From assembly GCA_964304625.1 (NCBI GenBank), contig OZ199839.1:3071223-3135222 (forward strand): a DNA stretch of 64,000 nucleotides. The letters run 5' to 3'. Within the stretch, counting starts at the first letter, position 1. Each line of letters starts with the position of its first letter. The stretch is from Kudoa neothunni. Taxonomy: Eukaryota; Animalia; Cnidaria. Shown in pieces: positions 16,004-58,867 of the stretch. The translations under genes and the position numbers were made by a program. Below the pieces are notes generated by a model, which made no database searches, was not told the DNA's origin, and saw nothing but the letters and a program-made list of their open reading frames with translations.

Positions 16004-18244
16004 ATGCAATCGTCAGCATCTATTATAATGCAGGTTAGATTGTTGGGAAATCTCCAAAAAAATATTACTACACTCACCAGATTTCCAGCACGCACACTCA
16101 CAACCACTCCATGTTTGTACGTTAACAAGAAAATTTTTGCATCCGACCTATACGATGTAACTTGCGAGGATAAAATGACATTCCTGGATATGACAAGATA
16201 TCATGTGGATCGAGCTATCGAGATTGCCACACCTCTTCTTATCAAAAGGGAGTACATTGGGTTGGCAGGTGTGTGTGATAGGGACAAGGAATATTTTGTT
16301 CGTGGTAGATGAGTTATTGGATAGGCGCTCGAGTAAACACATTATTATACCAAAATAGGTACATTGGAGCGACTAAAGAGATGTAAGCAGGTGCTCAAGT
16401 TGGAGTTTCCTTTGAGACGAGAAAACGGTCAGATCGAGTTGATTACAGCATATCGCGCTCACCATAGTAGTCACAGATTACCTTACAAAGGAGGTCATTA
16501 TTGATTCCACTTTTGTACAAATATATTGAATGTCGGGGGTAGGTATTCGTTTCAGCGCGAATGCACACACGGAGGAAGTAGAAGCTTTAGCTCTTTTAAT
16601 GACGTTTAAATGTGCAGTTTGTGATATACCATTCGGAGGTGCAAAAGGCGCTATCTCAATCAACCCCAACAATTACAGTGTCAGTTTTCACCTATCCTCT
16701 CTTCCTTCTTTTAGTTTTATGTATGCTGACCTTCATTGGTTGTAGGCTGGGGAAATTGAACGCGTCACTCGACGTTTTACTTTGGAATTGGCTATTCGTG
16801 GTTTTATTGGCCCTGGAGTTGATGTTCCGGCCCCAGATATGGGAAGTGGCCCTCGAGAAATGGCTTGGATTTGTGATACCTACAAAATGACCGTTGGCAA
16901 CTCCGATATCAACATAAATGCATGTGTGACCGGCAAACCACTGTCTCATGGTGGTATACATGGACGAACAACCGCCACTGGAAGAGTAAATTTCTTCATT
17001 AATCTATTTTTAAATGTCAATAATGGTTGGTTGTCGTTTGTAGGGTCTAATGAATGGACTCGACTACTTGCTGAATCATCGTATTCTCTCCTTTTTCAAT
17101 AATTTAAAGATTTATAATGTTGAAATTTAGCTAGTATTATAAAAGATGCCAATATCATCCCTGGAATCAACAACAAGACCTATGTGGTGCATGGTTTTGG
17201 AAATGTCGGATCGAATAGCGCTCGTTACTTGACGCGCAAAGGTGGAAAATGTATTGGTGTTGTTGAAAACAATTGCTCCATCTACAATCCCGATGGAATC
17301 GACCCTGAAGATTTAGACCAATACAAATCTGTACCTATATATTTAATTGCACAGGCTAAGAATTTGATTTACTTATTCTATAGAAAAACAAAACTATCAT
17401 TGGTTATCCTCACGCCAAGGTATTACATTATTTATATGTGACAACACTAAAAATGGATACAGCAAGTGAATGAGAATTTGATTGGCGCAGAGTGTGACAT
17501 TTTGGTACTTGCTTCCTGTGAAAAACAAATAACACTTCACAATGTGGACACGGTTAAAGCAAAAGTGCTCATTAGCTATTGATGGCAATCTTTGAATTTA
17601 ATTTTAGATTATCGCTGAAGGCGCAAACGGTCCTATCACACCCAAAGCTGATGAAATTCTTCGCAAAAATGGACACCTTATCATACCTGTAAATATTCAT
17701 TGTGTAGCTATAGTATCAAATTGATGTGTGCGTATGTGTAGGATCTCTACCTCAACGCAGGTGGTGTAACAGTTTCCTATTTTGAGTGGTTGAAAAACCT
17801 AAATCATGTGAGTTATGGTCGTCTCACCTTCAAACATGAAGAATCCATCAATACCGATATTTTGGACAGTGTTTCGTCATCGCTCACCTCCCACTTTGGT
17901 GATACCATTCCTATAACAGCCTCTGATGAGATGAAGAAAAGAATAGCCGTATTTCCGATTTTCATTAAGATATTGTCGTAAGAAACGTTTGTTTTTTACT
18001 TACCTCACATTAGGGTGCCTCAGAGAAAGATATTGTCAATTCAGGTCTCGAATATACCATGCAAAGATCTGCTAATGTACGGTTGATTGATTCAGCCATT
18101 ATAATGGTTGTGATGATTGATTTTTAGAAAATTATGACCACCCGCGAAAAATATAATCTACAGTGCGATATCCGTTTGGCCGCTACTGTGAACGCGATCG
18201 AGAAAATGACGACTGCTTTCTGCGACGCAGGTCATACTCTTTAA
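16004..18244 (+). CDS. GLUD1: Mitochondrial glutamate dehydrogenase, animal (antenna) type, 12 exons
   Basis: Motifs LPYKGG|[93 protein letters not shown], antenna region, GASEKDIV. 11 short GT-AG introns. Stop TAA at 18242-18244. Exact N-terminus uncertain. Confidence 0.96.
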
Positions 18245-21603: not shown

Positions 21604-24600
21604 ATGAGTGTGTTTAGGCGAATTCAGCATGGAAATTTTAATTTCCTGTATAAAACATCTTTTAAAATTTTAAAAATCTTTACCATCTGAATATTTTTAG
21701 TTTTGGAAATATTCCAAAGATATTTGAAGGGGTTGTGATGTTGAGGGGAATAGGATTAGGGTTCTCTAAAACAGATATCCAGAGATATTTGCATCCACTT
21801 TTGGATCTAGGAAAACCAATTGAAATACAGAAAATCTATCGACTCAAGGAATTTCAAGTGGCGTTGATAAAATTATCATCAGAAATGCCCTACACGAAAC
21901 TGATGGATAGAAACTTACAGTATTGCTCCAACATAGCAGCGTATCCTGAGTTGATCCCAAACGCTGCATTTGAGTATGAGTGAAACATGGTTGTGCGCCC
22001 TATTAACTAATGAACTGTAGCTATTTTGTGAGTAATTTTGAGGTGGACGGTGAAAATTTGGAAACGCGAATCGATGAAGTTAGTAAAATTTTATTAGAAA
22101 ATTTCCCCACCTCGAAAATAATTTCACTGAATCATTATCATGTAACCACATCGTCGTCATTGAAACAAGATATGGAAGAGGAAGAATCGTTGATGGGTTC
22201 TCAACATGCGACATCATCGGATTTCAAACAGGCGTACATCGATATGTATGAGATGAATAAATTCCAAGAGTCATTGTCCACCTATTCTCCAAAGCTGTTA
22301 TTAAAATTTGATGATGATAGTCAGTTGGAAAAGATTGTTAAGTTCGGTGAGAAATCGATCAAAGGTAGTGGTTTTTCTGTTTGAAACAAATTTACATTTA
22401 TTATAATTACGTTTATTTTTATTTGATCGACATATATAGAATATGGATTCAATGTGAGAGTTAATCCGTTTTTCGACACTCCATATTCGTATGAGTTGAT
22501 TGATTGATTGATTGATTGTATTAATTGGAATGACTTTATGGTGATAGAGTCATGTCAGTGTACGATATCCGCTTGGATCTGATGAACATGAAATGTTCGC
22601 CTGATGTCACCTATCAAGATATTCAAAAATGGTGTTTTCCCGCCGAAATTAATGCTGCCGGAAAATATAAAACCAAAGATTTCTATTATGTGATACCAAA
22701 GGATTATTGGAGTTATTGCCAATTGCTGAAAAAAGTGGAACCGCTTAAACGTAACATAGTCTCTTCGTCTCCTGCCGAAAATTGCCATAACAACCTAATT
22801 TTTGCGAAACCTGTGATAGAAAGAAGACATCTTTGTCCGTACAATTCGATATTAGGCTCTGCTGAAACCGGAACAAAACAAACCAACTATATTGAATACC
22901 CCAAATATGTGAAAGTTGGAAATCTTCCTGTTGATATCACCAAGGATGATGTGAGACAATTGCTCTCTTCACATGATGCACACATTGAAGATATTCAATT
23001 GGTGAAAATGAAAAACTCGACGACTGCATTTGTGGGCTATTCATTTGTTTATGAAGCCTTTCTTGCGTTGTTTAATTCGGGTCGAGTTTTGAAAAATCAT
23101 GTGCTTATAGTGAAGAAATTCAGAATATATGGGTATGTCCATTTATTGAAGTGATTGCAGTTGGCTTATGGTAAAATTATGGTTTTTAATGTTGTCGATT
23201 ATTTCGGTTGTGGGTAAATTTTAGTTTAATTTGGAGGGTATAACTTAATATCACTAATTCTATATAAGAAATTCTGTACGTTATTCTTCTACGGTAGTTG
23301 TTAGGATTAAGAAGGTATTTGCGAATGCATGATATATTTTGTTATTTATATCAGTGGTTCCCAGCCTTTTGGGCGTCCTCGAACCGTTATCAATTAATAT
23401 GAGAATTGTGTTAAGAATTCAGTATATATATTTTTTAATAGCGCTAAGAAAAAATTCCACATATTCATTTTCTACCTTTTCAATCATAGAACAACAAATA
23501 ATATAAATATATAACTAATGAGATTTCTGCCTGTTTTTCTAGTCGTCAACCAGAAGCATCGTCACAAAATATATTCCTTACGAGTATCTCTCCACATTTA
23601 TCAGCGAATGTTTTGAAAGAATTTCTATACCCTATTATACCTTGGTCGGTTACTCATGTGAGAATAAACCATGCAGGAAATAAGTTGTTTCGTGTGAACT
23701 TTCGTTCTGAAGTGGATTATATACGTTTTCTTAGATCATATAAATTTTCAATATGTAAATAGGCCTTTTTGTTATGTAATATTTAAATCTGTTTAAGATG
23801 GAGAGTTTATTCATTTTCTGTCGCCTCACGCCATCAACTACGTATCAGATACAACACAAGCGTAAGTCGAAAATGTGATTAATTTAAATTGTCTAATTTT
23901 ACTGTTGTTGATATAGAATTGCCGATCGATTATCTCCCGGCGTGTTAAGTTTGTTAAATTTGCCACGAAATATCTCCAAACAAGATCTTACGGACTTTAT
24001 GGACAGAAGAAGTTACGATGAAATCAAAATATTACATATGAACCATCTTAATTTGGGAGAATCCTATATTGATTATCGGCGTCTGCTGGACAACACATTA
24101 GACAACGCATCTATAACCAATTCGAAACCAGCTAATGGGCATATTAGCAACGATTTGAGAACTATTTCGAAAATCTGTCAACAAAATTACACCAACTTTC
24201 CATTGGATATTAGATATGACCATTCCGGTCGATTTGTAGGCCTTGTTGATTCTACGGACATTCCCACTGAAAAATCTCAATCAGATGCAGAATCTGTTAA
24301 ACTATTTTTTGAGCCAACACTAGCCAAAATATACTTCAATAATTACTATGACACTAAATATGGTTACTATTTAGCTGGGAAGAAATTTCGAGGTAGAATT
24401 TTGTTGAATCTATCGCTGAATTTGTATTCGTAACTATTAACGTATAGATCACGGTTGTGCAGGGTACCTGATATGGGATATGGGAATATGTGACTTTCGT
24501 TCGTATATGAATTGCTCTTTTAGTTCGAATTTTAAATTAGACGTCTAGAATTAATAAATCAAGAGTACTCAACGTTTTTGATGTGAGAGGTTTCGATGGG

Positions 24601-25209
24601 CCCACCGTATACGATGATATTGTTAAATTCTTCGGTACCGCGAAATTCAACTCTATAGAAAAACATAAATATGGTTATTTTGTCTATCTTTCCAGTCTTC
24701 ATCTTGTTGAGAGTATTCTCTATCACGACGGAGAATATTTTAGTATTTTTATCCATATGTATTAGTTTGTTGTTTGAACTAAAGCAATAATTACAGATGG
24801 TAAACGAATCTCTGTCAGCAGTCTACTAAATGATGGCTCTTCGTTGTAAATTATTTAAATTGATTTTGTTCAAATCTGATACTTTGTATAGTTTGAATGC
24901 GGTTATTCTTCACAATCTACCATGTGAAGATGTTGAGCACCATCTAAAAACCATCACAGTCAACTACAAATATGGTTACTACGAAAACATTCAGCCTCTA
25001 AATCCTGGCACGTCTTCTTTGATGATACATTTTGATAGTCCAGATGATTACTACAATTTTGCGCATATTAATGGTCTATATTACAGTATTATTGGAATTT
25101 CTTGTTTCGATTTCCATCATAAGTCTTATTTTTAGATGGAAGAATTTTAAAGACACAAATTGTTTCCGCTAAATGGGTAAAATCCCATCACGGAACGTTC
25201 AACAATTAA
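21604..25209 (+). CDS. Multi-RRM RNA-binding protein (about 6-8 degenerate RRMs, spliced) with a mitochondrial-presequence-like N-terminus
   Basis: MSVFRRIQHGNFNFL|FGNIPKIFEGVVMLRG. One clear RRM: YVKVGNLPVDITKDDVRQLLS...TAFVGY...GRVLKNHVLIV. Further RNP2-like starts LSLLNLPRNISKQDL, FDVRGFDGPTVYDDIVKFF and VILHNLP. Ends GRILKTQIVSAKWVKSHHGTFNN* at 25209. Confidence 0.72.
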
Positions 25210-26175: not shown

Positions 26176-27803
26176 TAATTAATATGACATTATCTTTTTT
26201 TCTCACTTAAACAGAATTATTATTTTTTGGTAAAGTTTAAAATATATAATAAACGTAAATTCAAATCATTTTCTACTATTTAAGTTTATAATTCCTATAT
26301 ATTATGCTTTCTAAATTGAATATATTTACTGTTGATAAATAACACTTCTATTTTAAACTTTTATTAAATATTAAGACTTATAATTTATGAATAAATAGTA
26401 GAATTTCCTTCCAGCAATTGTTGCCAGCAAGAATACTCATACTTTGGTTATTACACCTCCCAATTGATTTTAAATTATTTACGTTAGCTGTTGAGATTAT
26501 CAATATTATTTATTAATATTGTTTTTAGTTCTCCTGAAACTTTTTATATGTGTATCAAAAGGCCAATTTAATCCATACGTGACCTCATTACCTCTTCGTG
26601 CTGTATGTTGCCCTATGACAACATTTAAATTGGCGGGATTTCTAATTATGTACTTATAAAGTTTTAACGCAAGTTTTTATTTTTGTAGAAATAAATATTT
26701 TTTTATTCTAAAAAGAATATTCTCAATGTGTGATTTTCAGTCATTAATGGATTAAACGTTTATTGAAAAAATGTGATACTCAAAATTGTCAGATTATGAT
26801 TGTTAGTTTGTAAAAAATATCAAAAAGAAAAGTCAAGAGATTATTAATATTGGATAACAATAACTTCCGAATATGAGAGGATTTAAGAATTAAATACTTT
26901 TTATGTAATTTATTTCCTAGCATAAAAAAAATTATTAGAAGATAATAGTCCTTATCTAATCCGAACGAATTAAAATTAAACGCGTTAATCTTTAAACACC
27001 ATAGAAAATATCCAACACAAAATATTATGTATGACGGAATACTTTACTTATAGAAAAATTTAAATATCTTTGTATATTATTAAAATATTCAAAAAATTAA
27101 ATAAAATATATTTGATAATATTTATCCAGAATGAGTTGATTTTTTGATAAATTACGAACAAATAACTACTTACGATAGTTCCTCCATTTATTTAGCTGAA
27201 TTCCATCAAATTGAGGGTTGCCGTACAACGATTTTCGTTATGAATTGTATCATAGCGTACCTCAATTAGTTCATTCACAAAAATTAGTTTCCAGACTAAT
27301 TGTAAAACAGCCTATAAAATAAATTAAGACGAAAAGATTTACCATCATTAAAGATAACTATTTTTACGCTGAAAACTCGTTATATTGAAATGCTTCTTCT
27401 TTATTTTACGGCAGAAGGATCCTAGAAAAACACCGAGTTTCAAAAATTGATTTATTCACTCATAAGTCGAATAACTTGGAGAATAAAATAGCCTAAATCG
27501 TAATTTAACGACAAGCTGAACTCTTCATGTGGGCGACATATTTCGAACTTATATAATTTACCGTTGTATAAACAAATTAATATAATTGTATATCTAAATT
27601 ATAAACGAATTAGTTTATATTAATATACAAGAGTATATAAGAGCAAATTAAACAAGTTATTCATTAGAAAAATATATTTATACTTGGTGGAATAAAACGC
27701 AAAATAACATAATATAATTACAAACAAACAATAACATCTTAAAAAACGATAACTACTATTAATGAATACACTACACAAAACTAGTAATACCCGTTGGGGG
27801 GTA

Positions 27804-30449
27804 TCAAAAGTCTTTATCCCAGCCAGTGTTATCATCTGGTGGAATTTCATCATCTTTGAGGTAGGGAGCATTCTCGAGACTACTGATTTCGCTGAGAATG
27901 TTAGGATGATGAGGGGCAGGAAGTTCACGTTTTTGAAGTTTTTCCCAATTAAACCCATCAAACCATTTGTGTTTGCGAACCTCATTCCAACCCCCTTTTT
28001 GATGGCCGAGACGTTCGTTGGGGTTGACTTTACATAGTTTCTTGATAATAAGGGTGGCTACTCGGTTGACAAAATTAGGGAAAACCACATGATCAAGTCC
28101 TTTTAGGGCGGAATTATAGATTTTCATAGCATCGTCACCTCGAAATGGGGTATTTCCCATGAGCAGCTCGTAAATGAATATACCAAGTGACCAGTAGTCC
28201 ACTCCAAAATCATAACCTTTATTGAGGATAATCTCAGGAGCGATATATTCAGGTTCCCCCGTGAAAGTCCACGCTCTGCTTCCAGGGCCGAGTTTTTTGG
28301 CATTAACCAACTCGACCAGTTTAATATAACCATCAGAATCGATGTAAGTGTTGTCGGTCTTGAAATTTCTAAAGATGATATTGTTTTTGTGAAGATAGCT
28401 GAATCCTTCCACAATACAACCAGCATAGAATTTTGACGAATAATCATCCAACCGACCAGTTTTGTTCAACAACGAAAGCATATCACCACCAAGACAAGGC
28501 TCGAACAGCATATACACATATTTTCGGTCTTTGTAGGTGCGGTAAAGTTTGATCACAAAATGACAATCACATTTCGACAACACTTTCTTTTCGTGGATTA
28601 CTTTATCTTGTAGGTTGGCATCATGAACAGTGCGTTTTTTTATTTGTTTCAGTAGGTACATTTGTTTGGAGTCGTTTTTCAGCGCCACAAGATCCACCCT
28701 CGAGAATTGATCATTATTTCTAGTCATGATAACTCTTAAATCGTCAATTTTAATTCGCGATAAATCCACCCCATTAATGTTGATTTGTTGAGCACTTGGG
28801 GTACGACGATGAGTTCCTATAGGTCGCGGGGTCAATCTTCCAACATCTGCACTCTTAACAGTATCACAAGAGGAAGCAATATTGGAGGGGTATTCGGGTA
28901 CGTGTCTCAGATGAGGTCCAGTTGGGGTGAGATTTTCCACTTCCTGTTGTTCGTCTTCCTCGTTGATCAGCAGTGAAAAGTCATCGCTTTCAATTGCCAA
29001 CACCACACATCCACTCTCACCAGCGATAGCATCAAACGATCGACGCTCTTCATTCAAAAGGGCTTTTTCACCGAAATAGGAGCCACGTCCCAACTGTTTG
29101 AGTAGCACTGGTTTCTCAGCACTTTTATTGGGTTTTTTGTAGATCAACACCGACCCAGTTTTCACAATAAAGAACACTTTACCAATTTCACCCTTTTTAA
29201 AGATGCATTCCGACTTGCTATAAGTCAACTCCTGGACTATATTGATTACGCTCAATAACGAATTTTCTGATAGCTGCGAGAGTATTGGTACATTGCGTAG
29301 CAGCTCCACGTATTCGTTCTTCAGTTTGAAATGGGATTTTAGCATGATATTTTGGAAGACATCCTGCTTCAAACACCACACTTTACAATCAGCAGAAACC
29401 GCCTTACACGATGCAGTACGTAGACACCGGTACAGCACAGATGCTTCACCAGTCATACTACCATGAGTTATCTGACCAAGGTCTACATCGCGCCGTTGAA
29501 TCTGGAACACACCTTGTTGGATGATAAACAAACATTCTCCTGACTCTCCTTCTTTATACAGATATTCACCTTCTCCCACTGGAAACAGGAAACAACAGTC
29601 AACCAACTCCTTGTATTGATTTTTGTCTAATCGTGAGAAAAATTCGTTCTTCTTCAGCACACCGTTGATAAATTCTTTATCATCATTTGATTTGGAATAG
29701 TGAACTATTCCAGTTGAGAACATATCAGCTTGACCTGGTTTGGTTTCAATGGCCACATTCTGAAGACGTCTGTTCATCTGTTTTTTTATCTCATTTTGAC
29801 GAAGATCTCTCATTGCAATTTTCAAACGTTCGTTTTCCTCTTGCAAATAACTAATCTCCTCACGCAATTTGTAGTTTTCATTGGTCACTCGGTCCAACTC
29901 CACTTGGATAAGCTTCAGACGTTGTTCTTTGCTGGGGGTGCCATGTTTTTTGATTTTAGGATCAACTAAAAGATGCTTGAGATGGTTGGTTTTACGAGTG
30001 TCATGCCATGTTTCATTTGGATTGATTGCAGAAGAAGCTCCATGTTTGAGACTGTTGGTGTCGGACGAGTTGGTGAAGGTGTAAGTGCACGTAGTGTGGC
30101 CACTACCTAACATTACATCCCTCGATTCACAAGATGATTTTTTCTCCATTTCGTTGATTTGAGCTCCAGAGAACGAAGTCACCATCTTCGGCGGACCTTT
30201 CTTTTCGTTGGGTGTCAGTGACAACTCCTGGAACGATTTGTCATACGCGTCATCAAATTCTTTTTGTAGAGGTTCTTCCAATTCAACTGGTTCAACTGTA
30301 AAAAGTGGTATTTTTGAAGCATCGCATGGTGCTGGAAGTTGATTCATCGACTGAGATGGCAGCGTCGACGGATGTTGTTTCTTAGAAGCTGGGGTTCCAT
30401 TACATTTATCACCATGGTTTCCACTTAAAAAAAATCTGAACCTGGACAT
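27804..30449 (-). CDS. cGMP-dependent protein kinase-like protein, intronless CDS, predicted pseudokinase
   Basis: 881-aa ORF. Leucine zipper (LDRVTNENYKLREEISYLQEENERLKIAMRDL), two CNB domains (GEASVLYRCLRTA; FGEKALLNEERRS), AGC kinase fold (WTFxGxPEYIAPE, DYWSLGI), PKG C-tail PPDDNTGWDKDF. Catalytic motifs are degenerate (see findings). Confidence 0.95.
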   Translation of the reverse strand: MSRFRFFLSGNHGDKCNGTPASKKQHPSTLPSQSMNQLPAPCDASKIPLFTVEPVELEEPLQKEFDDAYDKSFQELSLTPNEKKGPPKMVTSFSGAQINEMEKKSSCESRDVMLGSGHTTCTYTFTNSSDTNSLKHGASSAINPNETWHDTRKTNHLKHLLVDPKIKKHGTPSKEQRLKLIQVELDRVTNENYKLREEISYLQEENERLKIAMRDLRQNEIKKQMNRRLQNVAIETKPGQADMFSTGIVHYSKSNDDKEFINGVLKKNEFFSRLDKNQYKELVDCCFLFPVGEGEYLYKEGESGECLFIIQQGVFQIQRRDVDLGQITHGSMTGEASVLYRCLRTASCKAVSADCKVWCLKQDVFQNIMLKSHFKLKNEYVELLRNVPILSQLSENSLLSVINIVQELTYSKSECIFKKGEIGKVFFIVKTGSVLIYKKPNKSAEKPVLLKQLGRGSYFGEKALLNEERRSFDAIAGESGCVVLAIESDDFSLLINEEDEQQEVENLTPTGPHLRHVPEYPSNIASSCDTVKSADVGRLTPRPIGTHRRTPSAQQININGVDLSRIKIDDLRVIMTRNNDQFSRVDLVALKNDSKQMYLLKQIKKRTVHDANLQDKVIHEKKVLSKCDCHFVIKLYRTYKDRKYVYMLFEPCLGGDMLSLLNKTGRLDDYSSKFYAGCIVEGFSYLHKNNIIFRNFKTDNTYIDSDGYIKLVELVNAKKLGPGSRAWTFTGEPEYIAPEIILNKGYDFGVDYWSLGIFIYELLMGNTPFRGDDAMKIYNSALKGLDHVVFPNFVNRVATLIIKKLCKVNPNERLGHQKGGWNEVRKHKWFDGFNWEKLQKRELPAPHHPNILSEISSLENAPYLKDDEIPPDDNTGWDKDF

Positions 30450-33400
30450 CTTTCAACAACTAAAACAACAACATTAACGATACGGTAAATATTTAGCTAG
30501 GTGAAAATTTAGCTGTTATTGTGAAATCACAAACAGGCTTTATCTAATAAACGAATGGTTGTCGGATAACAAATAAAATTCAACTAAATCTATACATAGA
30601 AATGTATCATCACAACTCGATCAACAGCTTATTCGTTAAGCAGACCGAAAAGATTTAAAAACAACCAAATTTATTCAACAACAATTATGGATCGATTTAA
30701 TTTGATTAAACATTGAAATATGTCGACAACAAGAGTGCACTATCAATTTGATGCTGTCAACAAAAATAACGTTCAAATTGAAACTAATGGCCGATGTGAT
30801 AAAGGTATGTTAAATTTATTCAATCAATCAAGTGAGAAAATTTGTTTAATTTTATATCAAATGAAACATGTTAGAAGTAAACAAGGCTTACCTTTGTGAA
30901 TTGATAAAGTGGATGGAAAACGATAAAACAATAAAATAAACTGAAAACGATTTCGCTGCAAGGTAAATTCAAGAAGTATGACAGAGGATCCCTAAAACAT
31001 GCACAGATCAATAGACAATCTCACATAAATCTGAGAACCAACTTAACATCAGCTTGAGAAACAACCAGCCAACGTAATTCCTTGGTGACTTTCGCGTTAG
31101 CTTACGATCTTTGTATCATATATAAATTGATAGATTTGGACTGAGAAAATTCTGATTTATTACCAACCTAAAAATGATTCGTCAATCCATCATCATCTCA
31201 TTGATAACTTCAAAAAATCAACCTCACAGAAATTAAAAGGATAAGTATACAATTAATCGGCTTATCATTTCGATAAAGTATACCCATTCTCAATTGAGTT
31301 ACGATCTTAGTATATAAATGGAGAAAATATTATTTGAAACTTGGCACATGTTTTTCTACCAAAAATCCACCATCTATAACCTTTAAACCAAATGTTCTCA
31401 TGGGCAGCTTGATTATGTATTAATCCATTTTCGTATTTATTGAAAAAGCACAGAAATGTATTCCAATATTAGAAAATAAATATTTATAATTTAAAATCAA
31501 CAAAGTCAACACCTATTTTTAAATAGATCTGCTTCATTGATTTCAACTATAGATTACAATCCGTATACATTGATAATAATATTTTTAACACTCTTAATCT
31601 TATATATGATTGAGCTTTCCGATCTATGTGAGAACTTAAGTTATTCAATAATTGTGCGTATTTCGGCTCGTCTTATTGGCATCAAATTCTTCCTTAAATT
31701 ATTGTGAATAATTACGAAACATTATTTTTATTCAATATAATATTGACACACACCAAATGAATTGTATATTTAAATAGTGTATTAGCTTGCGATATCTCCC
31801 ACGTTCAACAGAGTATCAGTGCAATAATAACAAGGAGACTGGATTGATTTGGATTAATCTCAACTGTTCATTAGGAACATTCCTCATTTGTCAAAATGAA
31901 TGTTTATGTGTTAAACTAGATATTTTCATTTATCCATTCTATCATTAGTCAGTTATCCAGTTATTCACCTATCAGGCACAATAGAGGATTTTTGTGATTT
32001 CATTGCTTAAAATACGGTTAATATTGTTGCTCTTCGTTTTCCTATATAGCTTTTAATTTGTTCTCTGTGTAATTAATGCACTACAGCTGTCCACATTAAA
32101 AATTTTAGTAATAATTTTCAGTGCAGATCCAGCAAACGTTGGTATGTCTAAAGTCTTACGAAATCAACGAATCTTCAACAAATAAAGTGCTATATTTTTA
32201 TTTGTTAAAATGTTACGTGGGTGACGGGTAATACGTAATCCTTTCGAGACCGGGGGAAAAGTGCGTATTGCCTAACATGGTTGGTTAATTCGCAATTTTT
32301 GAGACGCTTGCGTATGTTCAAAATTCTACTATTCATTAATTATTATCGTAGTATTTTGCTTTAGAAAACAATAATTATTTTTAATTGTTTCTTACACCTC
32401 GTCTATATGGTAAATAGATCTTCTAACTTTAAGCGGATTTTTAGAAAGAAATAGAACCACTTTTTTGTTAAATAACCATTATTTATTTGAGGCATTTAAA
32501 TGGTTTTTGTGATTAGCTATTTCTTCATCAACAGTTTCTAAATATGATAAGCTAATGTCTCCGGAATAACTGGAGGAATTCTTTCATTTTTTCATCGTCT
32601 TTGCTTCGATATTCACAAACCCCAAAAGTGGCACTTGAATAATGTTTTAGTTATATGAGAATCGTCTTGCTAAACTAAACCGAAGAATCTAGCTCTCCCC
32701 TTTTAATATTTTCTATACAGAGAATCACATCGAAATGAAATCGTAATTTTGTCATAGTTAAAAATCAACTCCATCTCGAGCAGGCACATGCCATGAGTAT
32801 TTGCTTTGAATAAGCACTCAATGGTTTTACTTCAGTATTAGATTACCACGAATTTCGAAGTTACCAAAAAAAATTCATGACTAAAAACTTTAGATATTGT
32901 TTAATTTAAATTTAAGAATTTTTCAAAAACTTAATTATTTTAAAATAAATAAATTAAATAAAACTACACGGGGCCTTTCTCTTGAATTCTATGTAAAAAT
33001 GTCGCTCCTTAATAATACAGCCACATAACCATTCTATTTTGTTGTATCAATTAGTTTGAAATGTTCTGGTAATTTGTATACTACTTTTTCTGTAATTGTA
33101 GAAGCTCTAGGATTGATCTACCATCAGCAATAACTTTTATTTCTTCTTCGTATGAAAACTTTAAATAAGTTTAACAGAGTCGTTACTATTCATGATTTAG
33201 ACGGCATCGTTACAGTAGACAACACAGAGATTAATTATCTACTCGGTAAATTGTAATGTTTCATGTTTATACAACAAAAATAATAAATTTTTTTATTAAT
33301 TTGAAATTAATCAACCAGCATAAAAATTGTCTAAACAAGCATGTAAAATTTTGATTTTTGAATAAAGAATTGAAAAGTCATGAGAAGCAGCGAAGATTCC

Positions 33401-40071: not shown

Positions 40072-41234
40072 TCAATCATTTCTATAAATTTTGCAATGTA
40101 AAGATGGAAAGTATTTTATATTTTCGTAGACATCGGTCACAGAATCTATATTATTTATCATTTTAATTACGCGATCAGCTTTCTCCATTTTTTCATCGGT
40201 GAGTTCAATCAAACTATGAGGGATAAATTCGTTTGAGGATGATATAATCTCGATAGAGTCAGCTATTGCTGATTTTTTCAATGAATCCGCCACATTTTTA
40301 TGATTATTCATGTCACACACAAACTACACGAAATGTAATCACAATAGTTGGTAACAAACCAACCAATAAACAATACATACAATATATACAAAACGTACCT
40401 CGATGATTTTATTGTGAAATGGCGAAATTGAAAAAGACACTTCTTCTGCATTGGATTCAATAGCTAATTCTTCCATCTAAAAAAATTAAATGATTGAAAT
40501 CGTCCGTCCCTATTCACTTTCTCGACAATATCGGTAAATGGATAGTTGCTGGAGGTATCGCAATCTTCCGGGTGGAATTTGTCTCTAATTCGAACAACTC
40601 CTTTCGTGCTGAACTGATGCATTATCGAACCTTCGGTAACAATAGACATACTAGCAACAAATTGAAAATAGTAAAAACTATTAAAACAATGATTGACAAC
40701 AACTGTCAAATTACCCAAATTTTTTTATCACTTTATTAACATCACCAATCAACACTTCTCTGCTTCGTGAGTTCCCTTCAATCACTAGAATATATCCGCC
40801 ATCACCAACCGTTTCGACTCGTTGGGTTTTTTGAAGAAAAACTTTCGACTATTTTAATAATGATAGATTTTAAATAGTGGATGGCAACGTTTAGAGTTGC
40901 TACTTTATGTGCATTTTTAATGCAGGTTTCCACTGTTTTCATGCTTACAAAACTCGCTTTCGCCCTTTCAATCCAATACTCAAGATCTGGATTAAACTTA
41001 GGATCTGGTCCCCCTCCTTTTAATCCCATATTACTCACGTTCAACTACAATTCTACGTTTACTTTGCACTGCATTAAACACTCGCATTGTTATATGGCCA
41101 GTTATTTTGCTTTTAATGGCATCCTGACTTTCCTTTATGTTTTTTACATTTTTCCAATGGGAATGCCCTGCTTTAGAGACTGCTGAAATGCTCAAATCGC
41201 GCCTGTATGAAAAGTAACGTGAGATCTTAAGCAT
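40072..41234 (-). CDS. TACO1: Translational activator of cytochrome c oxidase 1 (YebC/PmpR family), spliced
   Basis: Presequence MLKISRYFSYRR, then AGHSHWKNVKNIK, GGPDPKFNPDL...AKA, HQFSTKGVV, EFIPHSLIEL and DSVTDVYENI, which are YebC/TACO1 hallmarks. Confidence 0.9.
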
Positions 41235-42218: not shown

Positions 42219-43122
42219 ATGAACGAATACAGATATAAGTTTGTAGATATACAAATATTTTAATGTCCGTTCACAATTCTGACGATAAAATTTAGATTAT
42301 TTTTCGGGAAAATTTGGGTGACATACTTATGTGCCTAATGAATAGCCTCTTTTTATGCCGTTCTCAAGGAAAGGTGCATTATGGGGAATTAAATCGAACA
42401 CAGATTCTACCAACACTTTACTTTAGGTAAGATACACTGCAAACAATTCCTACACAGTCGATCCTATACGAACAGAGGACTTTTTTTGTTCCAGTATCGA
42501 GTTTGTTTCGGTAAAATTGTATTAATTAGACTAAAATTAATACAATTAATGTTTAGACAAAAATATGCTGCCATTCATTCCAGGAATTTCTACACAATAA
42601 AATACAGTCAATAATTGATTTGATAGATGCCTCAGATAATCCACCTCCTAATCAAATGAATGTATTTATTCTTGGTAAGTGTAAAAAATGATTGTGAAAT
42701 TAGATATTGGTTTCCTTTTATGTGGATGAAAATTCGACAAACCCTCATGTGAGAGATGCGACGGTGGAAGAAATGGACATTTGGGAATCGTGGAAATTCT
42801 CCTTATATTTCAAACGACATCAACAACCCAAATGTATGCCAAACATTTCTTCTAATGTAATATAAATATTTTATAACAATAGGGAATAATAAGTTGAAAA
42901 AATACTTGATTAATTCATTAAGAGATTCTGTAAGTATCCTGAAAGATTGTCTCTAACTATTCTCATTATCTTTACATCAAGATAGCTCATATGGCCCTTA
43001 TCGTAAATTCCATTGATTATGTGCCTAAAATAAAAAACTTCAAAGAATTCAATCAAGTCTTTGATAACTCATTCGATGGATTAGTTCCATACCGTAACAA
43101 CATAAAAGTAGATATTATATAA
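42219..43122 (+). CDS. ATG101: Autophagy-related protein 101 (HORMA domain), 7 short exons; not in the ORF track
   Basis: MNEYRYKF|IIFRENLGDILMCLMNSLFLCRSQGK|VRYTANNSYTVDPIRTEDFFCSSIEFVS|...|ILVSFYV...IWESWKF...|IAHMALIVNSIDYVPKIKNFKEFNQVFDNSFDGLVPY. This parallels ATG101 HRSTGK, TQDVDCDFIDF, PWEVW and YLPK...VFD...QPY. Confidence 0.82.
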
Positions 43123-52148: not shown

Positions 52149-53169
52149 TCATTCGGCAACAATAGAATATTTTTCGTAGGGTTCATCATCGACCGTATCG
52201 TAAATTTTGTAGGATTCAGATTGAAGAATATTGAAAATGTATTCCAATTTGGGGTAGGATGTAATGGTTGGAGGTATTGAAAAAAAGTGATTTGGTTGGG
52301 AGAAATCAAGCGGATATCCTCTATGGTAGACAATATACGAAAAGTCTTGGATTATTTCGATAGCCCAATCCACGACAAAGATCTCTTCGTTGGTCACAGT
52401 GAATACGATGATTTTGTTGGGGAGAATTTTGTAGAAAAACCTGGACAAATCGATATTTTTTCTTCACCAGAAATAATCATAATCAAAAAACCAACATAAG
52501 TAAACACTAAATTTAAGATACACGATATGATTTATGAGTTTTTCAAAAAAGTAATTCTTATCAAAGTCATTATCATCGTTAAAGACCATCCATATGGTAC
52601 GATATGCTTGTTCGAAAACGGGATCATTGTCTGTGATGGCCGTGAAATCAGGAGGATTATCCACAGTAGCATAGGGATGAGCTTTGATATCTCGATGGTT
52701 ATTATAAAAATCTGGAATCTCGTCGTTGATGGATGACAATTGTTGATCGTAGTAGTCGCCCCATCTTGGAAATTTGGTTGGATAGGCATTATCTTTGAGG
52801 CGCAATCTACCTCCAGGCTGGCGGATGAGGAATTTCTCCTCAAAGTGGTACTCGCAGATCATGCTAGATGATGTGGGCACAAAATGGTTTCTAATAAATA
52901 ATTCAAGAATTAGTTTCATCGTGTGGCACTCCTATTCGAATTTGAGCATTTAAATCAATTCAAACTCATCAGCTCAGTGGTGTACATGATCACAACAGCG
53001 TAAACAACCAACTGACAACGCTAAAGACATACTTTTGTATGTGGAGTAACCAACACCAGCGTAGATTATCATCCTTCGGAAAATGGAATACAGCTCCTTT
53101 TATTAGTTCTCGTTTGGTTGTGGCGTTGTAGTTGGTGAAGCACTGAGGTACACAGCATTTTCTACCCAT
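52149..53169 (-). CDS. THAP-domain protein, 3 exons
   Basis: MGRKCCVPQC...FHFPKDDNLRWCW...|NHFVPTSSSMICEYHFEE...LKDNAYPTKF is a complete C2CH THAP signature with an AVPTIF-like box. It splices to the 52149-52448 ORF. No DDE domain seen. Confidence 0.88.
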
Positions 53170-56589: not shown

Positions 56590-58867
56590 CCTTCCGGGCG
56601 CCTCAAAAAACACTATACACTTGGTGCTCTTGAGGTCTATTTTTTGTAAAAATTGTGATAAACTTAGTTTAAGTATTTGAAAAAAATCTATCGAAGTGCT
56701 TCAAAGTTATCATGATAAACATTTCCTATGAAATAGCACGAGTTGCATCGAGTACAAAAATAATGTTACCGATCGCTATACTCTGAGCCTTATGAATTAT
56801 CGAAATCATTTTGATCCCTATTTTAGCGCTAATAAAAAAATTATAAAATGTTTAAAGAACATAAAAATGTATATTACTAAATAAATTGAGTTGTTTATCG
56901 ATCTCTAATGAATAATCAAAACAAACGGATTGTGAATGTTGCTCACAGCAATACTGTAAGCGTACAGTGCAGATGTTTCTTGATTTTCTGTCACTACTTC
57001 TCGAACATAAGTAGCATCCTCTTCTGAATTTTGATAAGTTTTCGTTGGTTCTATTCAACGTTTCTGTGAGAATATTAGGTCGTTTAATGTTCAAAAACGA
57101 CTTGACAAGCTCATCTGCTAAATTCTCAAGGAATTTGGATCTTGTAATTTTATTGGCACTGAATACGATTTTATACATGGAAAATGAATTAATTAAACTT
57201 ATATCTAAGATATTGAAGAAAACCATGGTTGGCCAACGGTTTGAATATCTCTTAACGCTGGTTGACGCGAATATTCTATCAACGGTGTCAACCCCACCTT
57301 TTGTTTTGTTTTGTTGTAACAATTAATAACATCTGGATTTCTGTATATATCATTAGATAAACTGGTATTATTTGTTGATCTTGTCGACATTAAAACCGCC
57401 TTATTTTTGTGCTACATATGATACCAGCATTTTCCTGTCATTAAAAAGAAAACGTGAACTGTATAAATCTCTGGATCTATTCGCTTTTATTACCTCAGGA
57501 ATATCTCATTTATTAGACCTGATGATACAAAGCATTGTGAGTCCTACATTTAGTAACTTATTGGAGAGGGGTACTGAGGTAAAAAATTGTTGGAAACAAT
57601 ATTTCTACCACTAGGTTCTAAATATTAAACGTGATCCAGTACAACACTCTCTCATAAGCATTTTACCCTTTGCTTATTGACTTCACCTAGATAAATGGAT
57701 ATATTATGACAATAATTAGTTGCGGGATCAACCAACAAAAAAATTTGATGCCATAAACCGCCGGTTTTGTAGGCATGTACAGCTTAAATGGGTATTTAGC
57801 CCTAAAAGGTACTAATCGCTCATCGACAGTTAGGTCTGCATGCGGAATCAGGTATTTAGACAATACCCCTGCCCAATTCTCAAACATTTATCGAATTGGG
57901 CAAAACTTATCGCCTTCTCTTCGCTGAGGCCTCATTTCAAAGTCATAAAAATGTAGAGCCCTCGTTCTTTCAAGAAATCTACGTAAAGGCATTATTGTAC
58001 GAAATATGGGTCTACGCTTGTTTACACCCCATAAAGATTTAACAGATTCTAGTTTAGATTTATAAATCGCCATGTATAAAAGAATGCCAATGTAAGCACG
58101 AAACTCTAAACATGATAACTCTTTCCACGATTCGAGATAATGTTGGAATCCAAATTTTGTTGTATTTCTGACAATAATATCTCAGAAATTGACGCCAAAA
58201 AATATATACAGGCAATCAAGTAACGCAACTATTCTGTTCGCTGTATAGGCAATAATGCCTCTAGCCTTATCCATTATGTTCTCCTCCCGTTCTTTGGAAT
58301 GTGTGGGTATTTCGGTAGACCATGCCTCGTTATTTTTATTTAAATACACAGAAGGTGTATTAACACATACATTATCATCAGAATCCGATGATAATCATTC
58401 TAAATCACTATACTCTTCAGTGTCAAGTATTTAACTGCAATCGCTATCGTTTTCACTGGAAAACATGCAATGGTAATCACTCATTTCTTAGAATCGATCT
58501 GTAATAATTTTTTTTAAAGCGGAAAAATATTTATATTTTTAATAATAACAACATATATAACGGCAATATTTGATTAGATATGGTTCCTAATTAAACGTTT
58601 CCATATGGCAACATTCGGCGTGAAAGGGTTAATTAATCGATAGAATTCTCTTAGATTTTAGTTAGAAAACATTTTTCTTCGCCCAAATCTATATAAATTG
58701 TTTGTTTTATCACTATGATATTTTTTTTAATTTAAGTGAGCATTGTAGAAAAGTAATATTTTTGGAAGAATGGACAGTGGATCTAACGTTCTCTATATCA
58801 GGAAAGGCAATAAAATATCATTCCAACAGGCTCTGTAGTCTATTAGACTCCAGAGTCGTTCGGAAGG
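56590..58867 (-). mobile_element. Decayed piggyBac transposon
   Basis: Remnants DKFCPIR, LTVDERLVPFRAKYPFKLYMPTKPAVYGIK, KTKGGVDTVD, RWPTMVFFNILD and the CRD CYLC...C...CEQH. Ends CCTTCCGGGCG (56590) and TTCGGAAGG (58867). A second-family terminus ...GTGAAAGGG|TTAA lies at 58600-58632. Confidence 0.9.

What the first reader, a model, noticed from the sequence alone, without database searches (positions are those of the whole stretch)
27804..30449. Intact PKG-like protein that has lost its catalytic machinery: a candidate cGMP-sensing pseudokinase
Seen in sequence: an uninterrupted 881-aa ORF. The Gly-rich loop (PKG GVGGFGRV) reads RNNDQFSRV. The catalytic loop YRDLKPEN reads FRNFKTDN (Asp to Asn, codon 28365-28367). 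DFG reads ELV (28305-28313). The P+1 GT reads GE. In contrast the beta3 Lys, APE, DYWSLG, the C-tail, the N-terminal leucine zipper and both phosphate-binding cassettes (GE...RTA and FGE...RS, the Thr/Ser cGMP-selective type) are kept. Established: simultaneous loss of the G-loop, HRD-Asp and DFG-Asp defines pseudokinases, and PKGs dimerise through the zipper. Inference: an open frame with selective loss of catalysis points to purifying selection for a non-catalytic role. It could be a cGMP-switched scaffold, a cGMP buffer, or a dominant-negative/allosteric partner of an active PKG. I do not know of a described PKG pseudokinase of this architecture.
Basis: partly seen in the sequence, partly recalled or inferred. 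Interest (0 to 1): 0.82.

Follow-up and report, generated by a model that had tools for sequence, protein, structure and literature searches.

The report
Myxozoan cGMP-kinase turned pseudokinase
A fish parasite (a myxozoan, very likely Kudoa neothunni) keeps a cGMP-dependent kinase whose enzyme site looks dead but whose cGMP sensor and overall fold are strongly conserved across distant myxozoans, so it probably acts as a cGMP-controlled switch or scaffold rather than as an enzyme.

Summary
Observation confirmed: an intronless 881-aa PKG1-type ORF with G-loop, HRD-Asp, DFG and P+1 Thr replaced. It is neither an assembly error nor a decaying pseudogene. A same-sample contig is identical; a second study's contigs differ by 32 silent versus 8 replacement changes; a 64%-identical ortholog carries the same dead motifs. 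Degenerate relatives in Henneguya and Thelohanellus form one clade with it (100/99, motif columns removed), grouped with cnidarian PKG1. Gene order supports orthology for Henneguya and the 64% ortholog. A separate 21-exon PKG with intact catalytic motifs lies on contig C1; guanylyl cyclases and PDEs are present. Additions: adenine-pocket positions are bulkier (A70L, L173Y, gatekeeper Phe) with Asp at Gly52, as in VRK3, while the Lys-Glu pair and substrate-groove acids stay. Correction: only CNB-A keeps cGMP contacts in all four; CNB-B does not. Best reading: ATP-blind, dimeric, cGMP-switched scaffold or regulator; partner unknown. Heterodimerisation with the active PKG is unsupported. No paper describing a PKG pseudokinase was found, but unrelated degenerate PKG1 copies occur in teleost fishes. 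The scan had not noted this before. No biochemistry was possible.

The parts
27804..30449 (-). Intronless ORF, 881 aa, PKG1-derived pseudokinase
29940..30449 (-). Variable, probably disordered N-terminal extension (aa 1-170); begins MSRF like the ortholog and like the MFKFF start of hydrozoan PKG
   Evidence: 24% identity to ortholog; pLDDT under 50; alignment
29784..29930 (-). Leucine zipper (aa 174-222); heptads with Ile/Val/Leu at d and Leu/Asn/Ile/Met at a
   Evidence: continuous helix 174-231 in model; heptads read; aa 171-250 are 62% identical to ortholog, 0 replacement vs 7 silent changes in close strain
29739..29777 (-). Autoinhibitory (pseudosubstrate)-like segment with RR-x-x-N-V (aa 225-237)
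   Evidence: aligns to the RxQGISAEP segment of PKG1; RR kept in ortholog, absent in myxobolids
29325..29699 (-). CNB-A (aa 251-375); cassette GE...RTA at 29409-29453 keeps Arg plus Thr/Ser in all four myxozoan copies
28950..29324 (-). CNB-B (aa 376-500); fold highly conserved (82% to ortholog) but cassette at 29028-29075 reads RSF / RPF / no Arg
27960..28763 (-). Pseudokinase domain (aa 563-830), PKG fold retained
   Evidence: model pLDDT 95; TM 0.94 to PKG Ialpha catalytic domain
28695..28721 (-). Degenerate Gly-rich loop; Asp580 at the Gly52 position is shared by all four myxozoan copies
28647..28655 (-). beta3 L599-L600-K601: C-spine Ala70 replaced by Leu, Lys72 kept
   Evidence: Ala in 98% of intact kinases
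28344..28373 (-). Catalytic loop: Asp166 to Asn695, Leu173 to Tyr702; Arg165, Lys168, Asn171 kept
28305..28313 (-). DFG replaced by ELV (EFT in ortholog; NFM and NFI in myxobolids)
28233..28268 (-). Activation/P+1 loop: phospho-site Thr728 (PKA Thr197) and APE kept, Thr201 replaced by Glu732
27807..27959 (-). AGC C-terminal tail ending GWDKDF; adenine-contact Phe327 position replaced
   Evidence: the C1 active PKG model also lacks this Phe, so it is weak evidence
16358..18079 (+). Glutamate dehydrogenase gene, tail-to-tail with the pseudokinase as in Henneguya; synteny marker, not part of the mechanism
40081..41210 (-). Multi-exon gene also found upstream of the ortholog on L007 in the same orientation; synteny marker

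Best explanation
The gene is an old myxozoan pseudokinase derived from cnidarian PKG1 and kept under purifying selection beside a separate active PKG. Shown by sequence: loss of catalytic and Mg-binding residues, orthology across Kudoa and Myxobolidae, selection, an intact CNB-A cassette. Inferred: (1) it dimerises through its zipper; (2) its kinase domain binds no ATP, because bulkier residues fill the adenine pocket and an acidic G-loop blocks the phosphates, and it sits in a VRK3-like pseudo-active shape; (3) in the Kudoa lineage the RR segment still docks in the acidic substrate groove; (4) cGMP binding to CNB-A releases that docking and exposes the groove or another surface to partner proteins. 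It would thus be a cGMP-switched scaffold or allosteric regulator whose output is binding, not phosphorylation. The partner is unknown.
For: Same dead motifs in ortholog P0001; degenerate PKGs in Henneguya and Thelohanellus; one clade 100/99 with motif columns removed; shared neighbours; 32 silent vs 8 replacement changes; A70L, L173Y/F, gatekeeper Phe and Gly52Asp, with K72, E91, R165, T197, D220, R280 kept; VRK3 has a filled purine pocket and Asp at Gly52 (PMC4718504); Phe at the Ala70 position abolishes activity in PKC and Akt without destabilising the PKC protein tested (PMC12721161); RR segment and groove acids (D656, D699, E734, E761) are kept together in the Kudoa lineage, while both RR and two of the acids are lost in myxobolids; guanylyl cyclases and PDEs in the genome.
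Against: No experiment on binding, activity or partners. Pocket filling is inferred from alignment; the model's pocket could not be inspected and it was built on an alignment of mostly active kinases. Pocket-filling changes and HRD loss are limited to the Kudoa-lineage pair; myxobolid copies keep HRD-Asp and Ala70. CNB-B, the cGMP-selective site in mammalian PKG1 (own knowledge), is the degraded one. Expression is only suggested.
Confidence: 0.55

Rival explanations
1. Direct regulator of the active PKG on C1: it heterodimerises or acts in trans as a dominant-negative or allosteric partner, tuning cGMP signalling.
For: An intact-motif PKG exists in the same genome; these two genes are the only cyclic-nucleotide-binding proteins found by the genome searches (lower bound); the AU test does not reject a common myxozoan duplication (p 0.12); pseudokinases often regulate their active paralogs (established).
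Against: The two zippers differ in type; mammalian PKG zippers are isoform-selective homodimerisers (own knowledge); no co-expression or binding data.
Confidence: 0.2
2. Constitutive structural scaffold or cGMP buffer without switching: the domains are kept for folding and protein contacts, and cGMP binding is passive or absent.
For: CNB-B is the most conserved domain (82%) although its ligand contacts are changed; the autoinhibitory segment is not kept in myxobolids.
Against: CNB-A keeps GE and Arg-Thr/Ser in all four copies, whereas the fish degenerate PKGs lost that Arg, which argues for selection on ligand binding.
Confidence: 0.15
3. Atypical low-activity kinase (metal-independent, or Glu standing in for the DFG Asp).
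For: Lys72, Glu91, Lys168 and Asn171 are kept; DFG Asp is Glu; myxobolid copies keep HRD-Asp. Some predicted pseudokinases such as CASK are weakly active (PMC4718504).
Against: The catalytic base is Asn in both Kudoa-lineage copies, all three G-loop glycines are lost and the adenine pocket positions are enlarged.
Confidence: 0.08
4. Young processed pseudogene or assembly artefact.
For: The gene has no introns in an intron-rich genome; if this is the K. neothunni assembly, its read coverage was about 7x (PMC12239612).
Against: Open frame and same dead motifs in an ortholog at saturated dS; pN/pS 0.07; intron-containing orthologs in myxobolids, with conserved gene order in Henneguya; identical same-sample contig.
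Confidence: 0.02

Closest known systems
cGMP-dependent protein kinase 1 (PKG1 / PRKG1 / Drosophila foraging; cnidarian PKG1)
   Same: Domain order zipper - autoinhibitory segment - CNB-A - CNB-B - kinase - AGC tail; 38-39% identity to cnidarian PKG1; groups with cnidarian PKG1 in trees; TM 0.94 to the PKG Ialpha catalytic domain.
   Different: G-loop, HRD-Asp, DFG and P+1 Thr replaced; adenine pocket positions enlarged; CNB-B ligand contacts changed; different zipper type; 170-aa N-terminal extension; no introns.
VRK3-type nucleotide-free pseudokinases
   Same: Asp at Gly52, degenerate G-loop, bulky hydrophobic residues at purine-pocket positions, Lys72-Glu91 kept (PMC4718504).
   Different: Unrelated kinase group; VRK3 has no ligand-binding regulatory domains; pocket occlusion here is inferred, not seen.
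Degenerate PKG1-like proteins of teleost fishes (Astyanax, Aulostomus, Iconisemion; annotated as PKG)
   Same: Same architecture, DFG Asp lost, derived from PKG1.
   Different: Separate clade (independent origin); HRD-Asp kept; CNB-A Arg lost, the opposite of the myxozoan pattern. No paper describing them as pseudokinases was found.
Non-catalytic cyclic-nucleotide effectors (PKA regulatory subunit, Epac)
   Same: Proposed working principle: cyclic nucleotide binding releases an inhibitory contact and changes partner binding.
   Different: Here the output module would be a dead kinase domain in the same chain; resemblance from knowledge, not tested.

Membership tests
PKG family (by descent and architecture) | N-terminal zipper, tandem CNB domains and AGC kinase domain in one chain | tested here: met
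PKG family (by descent and architecture) | Groups with PKG1 in a tree | tested here: met
   with cnidarian PKG1: SH-aLRT 98 in the 54-row tree, 93/93 in the careful 31-row tree; long branches apply
Active PKG enzyme | GxGxxG, HRD/YRD Asp, DFG Asp, GT of P+1 loop | tested here: not met
Active PKG enzyme | cGMP-stimulated phosphotransfer | not testable with these tools
   needs recombinant protein
Pseudokinase (sequence definition) | Loss of at least one of beta3 Lys, HRD Asp, DFG Asp with the fold retained | tested here: met
   two of three lost; model pLDDT 95, TM 0.94
Pseudokinase (sequence definition) | Functional gene under purifying selection, not a pseudogene | tested here: met
   pN/pS 0.07; orthologs in three other species
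Pseudokinase (sequence definition) | Expressed as mRNA and protein | tested here: inconclusive
   contigs of a second study cover only 27771-30461, a transcript-like footprint, but the run is not on record as RNA; the RNA run laid gave no reads
VRK3-like nucleotide-free pseudokinase | Purine pocket filled and G-loop side chains blocking ATP | tested here: inconclusive
   residues fit by alignment; pocket geometry and ATP binding not measured
cGMP-binding CNB domain | Cassette Gly-Glu and Arg followed by Thr/Ser: CNB-A | tested here: met
   kept in 4 of 4 myxozoan copies
cGMP-binding CNB domain | Cassette Arg-Thr/Ser-Ala and capping Tyr: CNB-B | tested here: not met
   RSF here, RPF in ortholog, Arg absent in myxobolids; no conserved capping Tyr between window and ortholog
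cGMP-binding CNB domain | Measured cGMP binding | not testable with these tools
   needs binding assay

The most novel reading that the evidence does not exclude
A pseudokinase directly switched by a second messenger: cGMP bound to CNB-A opens a dead, ATP-blind kinase domain that signals by partner binding, kept across distant myxosporean parasites as one of their two detectable cyclic-nucleotide receptors, with PKG1 having been converted to a pseudokinase independently in fishes.
Probability: 0.45. Interest if true: 0.8.

Novelty: new variant of a known kind. Interest (0 to 1): 0.62.

Why it matters
PKG is known as an enzyme; a conserved dead copy that keeps a cGMP site would be a natural test of what PKG does without catalysis and an example of a pseudokinase with a built-in small-molecule switch. 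Myxozoans have lost many genes, so retention across Kudoa and Myxobolidae points to a needed role in the parasite's cGMP signalling. Public annotations call the myxozoan and fish copies ordinary PKG1 or hypothetical, so the class is currently hidden.

Tried and rejected
Assembly error and young pseudogene: rejected. Recent retrocopy of the C1 PKG: rejected as recent, because myxobolid orthologs have introns and the Henneguya one keeps the gene order; an old duplication from the same ancestor is not excluded (AU p 0.12). Common origin with the fish degenerate PKGs: not supported. Word search with the zipper region found only P0001. Full-length structure from a 12-row alignment was poor in the kinase domain and was replaced by a 110-row kinase-only model. 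Literature searches for PKG pseudokinase, myxozoan PKG, CG4839, prkg1l and teleost inactive PKG found no description; two pseudokinase reviews do not mention PKG. The Kwon et al. 2019 pseudokinome survey and the PKG1 CNB-B structure paper were not held, so prior listing there is unchecked. The RNA run X11 gave no reads and is no test. SRR31175926 could not be tied to a species.

Full report
Observation. The ORF at 27804-30449 (-) is open for 881 codons with no intron. It carries two cNMP-binding domains and a kinase domain and its best solved relative is human PKG1. In 263 intact PKG-family kinase domains retrieved here the three G-loop glycines, Gly186 and Thr201 are 98-100% conserved.

Organism. 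The genome is 40.26 Mb in four contigs with one (TAAACC)n array at the end of C2. Weber et al. 2025 (PMC12239612) describe Kudoa neothunni as 40.2 Mb, three chromosomes plus a mitochondrial contig, with that motif at one chromosome end. I infer this is that assembly. The protein's clustering with Henneguya and Thelohanellus proteins agrees.

Not an artefact, not decaying. A same-sample contig matches 27237-32200 without a difference (not independent). Contigs from a second study (X5) cover only 27771-30461, that is the ORF and a few flanking bases, which looks like a transcript, but the run is not on record as RNA, so expression is suggested only. Of the 40 listed differences in X5, 32 are silent and 8 change a residue, none in the dead motifs; pN/pS is 0.07 overall and 0.03 in the kinase domain. 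An ortholog, P0001 (Logan run SRR31175926, species unknown, intronless, extremely AT-rich), is 64% identical overall and 77% in the kinase domain at saturated synonymous sites, and has the same dead motifs: RMTDQFSRL, FRNFKTDN, EFT, GE. The gene upstream of it lies upstream of the window gene too.

An old myxozoan lineage. The full HMMER search found a degenerate PKG in Henneguya salminicola (HZS_5948), and a word search with it found one in Thelohanellus kitauei. Both have an acidic G-loop with Asp at Gly52, and Asn-Phe-Ile/Met for DFG, but keep the HRD Asp and Ala70. Both are split into two gene calls in the public annotation and have 19-26-nt introns in the parts I modelled. With the motif columns removed, the four myxozoan proteins form one clade (bootstrap 100, SH-aLRT 99) that groups with cnidarian PKG1. 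Long branches could help such a grouping, but gene order is independent support for Henneguya: glutamate dehydrogenase lies tail-to-tail with the gene there and in the window. So G-loop and DFG loss most likely predate the Kudoa-Myxobolidae split, and the Kudoa lineage later lost the HRD Asp and the introns.

Active paralog and pathway. A second PKG at G000:C1, about 14,220,580-14,224,015 (+), has 21 exons with GT-AG introns, an open 717-aa model and intact GRGAFG, YRDLKPEN, DFG and GTPEY motifs. Its tree position is unresolved; holding it with the pseudokinases is not rejected (AU p 0.12), so an old duplication inside myxozoans remains possible. The genome also has guanylyl-cyclase-type genes and phosphodiesterases. 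The two PKG genes were the only cyclic-nucleotide-binding genes found, a lower bound because short exons are missed.

Anatomy of the dead site. In both Kudoa-lineage copies the positions lining the adenine pocket are larger: Ala70 to Leu599, Leu173 to Tyr/Phe702, gatekeeper to Phe649. Lys72, Glu91, Arg165, Lys168, Asn171, Thr197, APE, Asp220 and Arg280 are kept. This matches the description of VRK3, with a filled purine pocket, Asp at Gly52 and an intact Lys-Glu pair (PMC4718504), and engineered Phe at the Ala70 position inactivates PKC and Akt (PMC12721161). The kinase domain models at pLDDT 95 and TM 0.94 to PKG Ialpha, though the alignment was mostly active kinases and the pocket could not be inspected. 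The tail Phe327 is also lost, but so it is in the C1 model, so I give it little weight.

Regulatory half. CNB-A keeps Gly-Glu and Arg-Thr/Ser in all four myxozoan copies. CNB-B reads RSF here, RPF in the ortholog and has no Arg in myxobolids, yet is the most conserved domain between window and ortholog (82%), which suggests a structural or docking role. The RR of the autoinhibitory segment and the acidic groove residues (D656, D699, E734, E761) are kept together in the Kudoa lineage; myxobolids lack the RR and two of those acids. The zipper has regular heptads with Asn at two a positions and differs from that of the C1 PKG.

Mechanism. Most likely (0.55): a dimeric, ATP-blind pseudokinase in which cGMP at CNB-A releases the autoinhibitory contact and changes partner binding. 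Shown: loss of catalytic residues, selection, orthology, intact CNB-A cassette. Inferred: dimerisation, lack of ATP binding, cGMP binding, switching, partners. Rivals: direct regulator of the C1 PKG (0.2), passive scaffold or buffer (0.15), atypical weak kinase (0.08), pseudogene or artefact (0.02).

Comparison and novelty. By descent it belongs with PKG1; it fails the test for an active PKG and meets the sequence definition of a pseudokinase. It would work like a VRK3-type scaffold with a cyclic-nucleotide switch. I found no paper describing a PKG-derived pseudokinase, but the main pseudokinome survey was not available. Teleost fishes carry a separate degenerate PKG1 clade (Astyanax, Aulostomus, Iconisemion) that lost DFG and the CNB-A Arg, so the conversion happened at least twice. 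Other readers noted further dead kinases in this genome (unchecked), so pseudokinases may be common in it. Verdict: real, selected, a new variant of a known kind; interest 0.62.

Noticed in passing
P0140/P0275 (Astyanax), P0153 (Aulostomus), P0172/P0279 (Iconisemion), P0151 (Oryzias melastigma): Teleost PKG1-like proteins annotated as ordinary PKG but with DFG changed to GFA/GFT/GSR (Oryzias: YRN and DFR) and the CNB-A Arg lost; a clade independent of the myxozoan one. No description found.
   Followed up: partly
G000:C1:14220580-14224015 (L032:3580-7015, +): Intact-motif 21-exon PKG, fast-evolving (about 46% to other PKGs) with a divergent C-terminal tail.
   Followed up: partly
L036:1335-4077 and L037:1020-3505: The Henneguya and Thelohanellus genes are each split into two gene calls in the public annotation; short introns join them into full-length PKG-like genes.
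   Followed up: yes
window 16358-18079 (+): Multi-exon glutamate dehydrogenase gene, syntenic with Henneguya.
   Followed up: partly
window 40081-41210 (-) and about 42305-43119 (+): Two multi-exon genes also present beside the ortholog on L007; the first looks like a TACO1/YebC-family gene by eye (not tested), the second is unidentified.
   Followed up: partly
window 22010-25135 (+): Several ORFs, one with a weak RRM match, between GDH and the pseudokinase; probably one multi-exon RNA-binding gene.
   Followed up: no
window 52464-52919 (-), 56852-57322 (-): Weak THAP and piggyBac-like DDE transposase fragments (below Pfam cut-offs).
   Followed up: no
G000:C2:5426127-5426748 (L034): Only a 3' fragment of the 18S rRNA gene with ITS and 5.8S-like sequence was found by the fast search, preceded by unrelated DNA.
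   Followed up: no
P0154 (JGI) and P0246/P0280 (Galendromus mite): Other degenerate AGC kinases in the hit list: a PKG-like protein with NFG for DFG, and a mite protein with two degenerate kinase domains.
   Followed up: no
whole genome G000: No PKA regulatory-subunit-like cNMP domain was found by two searches; if real, the two PKG genes would be the main cyclic-nucleotide receptors. Searches miss short exons.
   Followed up: partly
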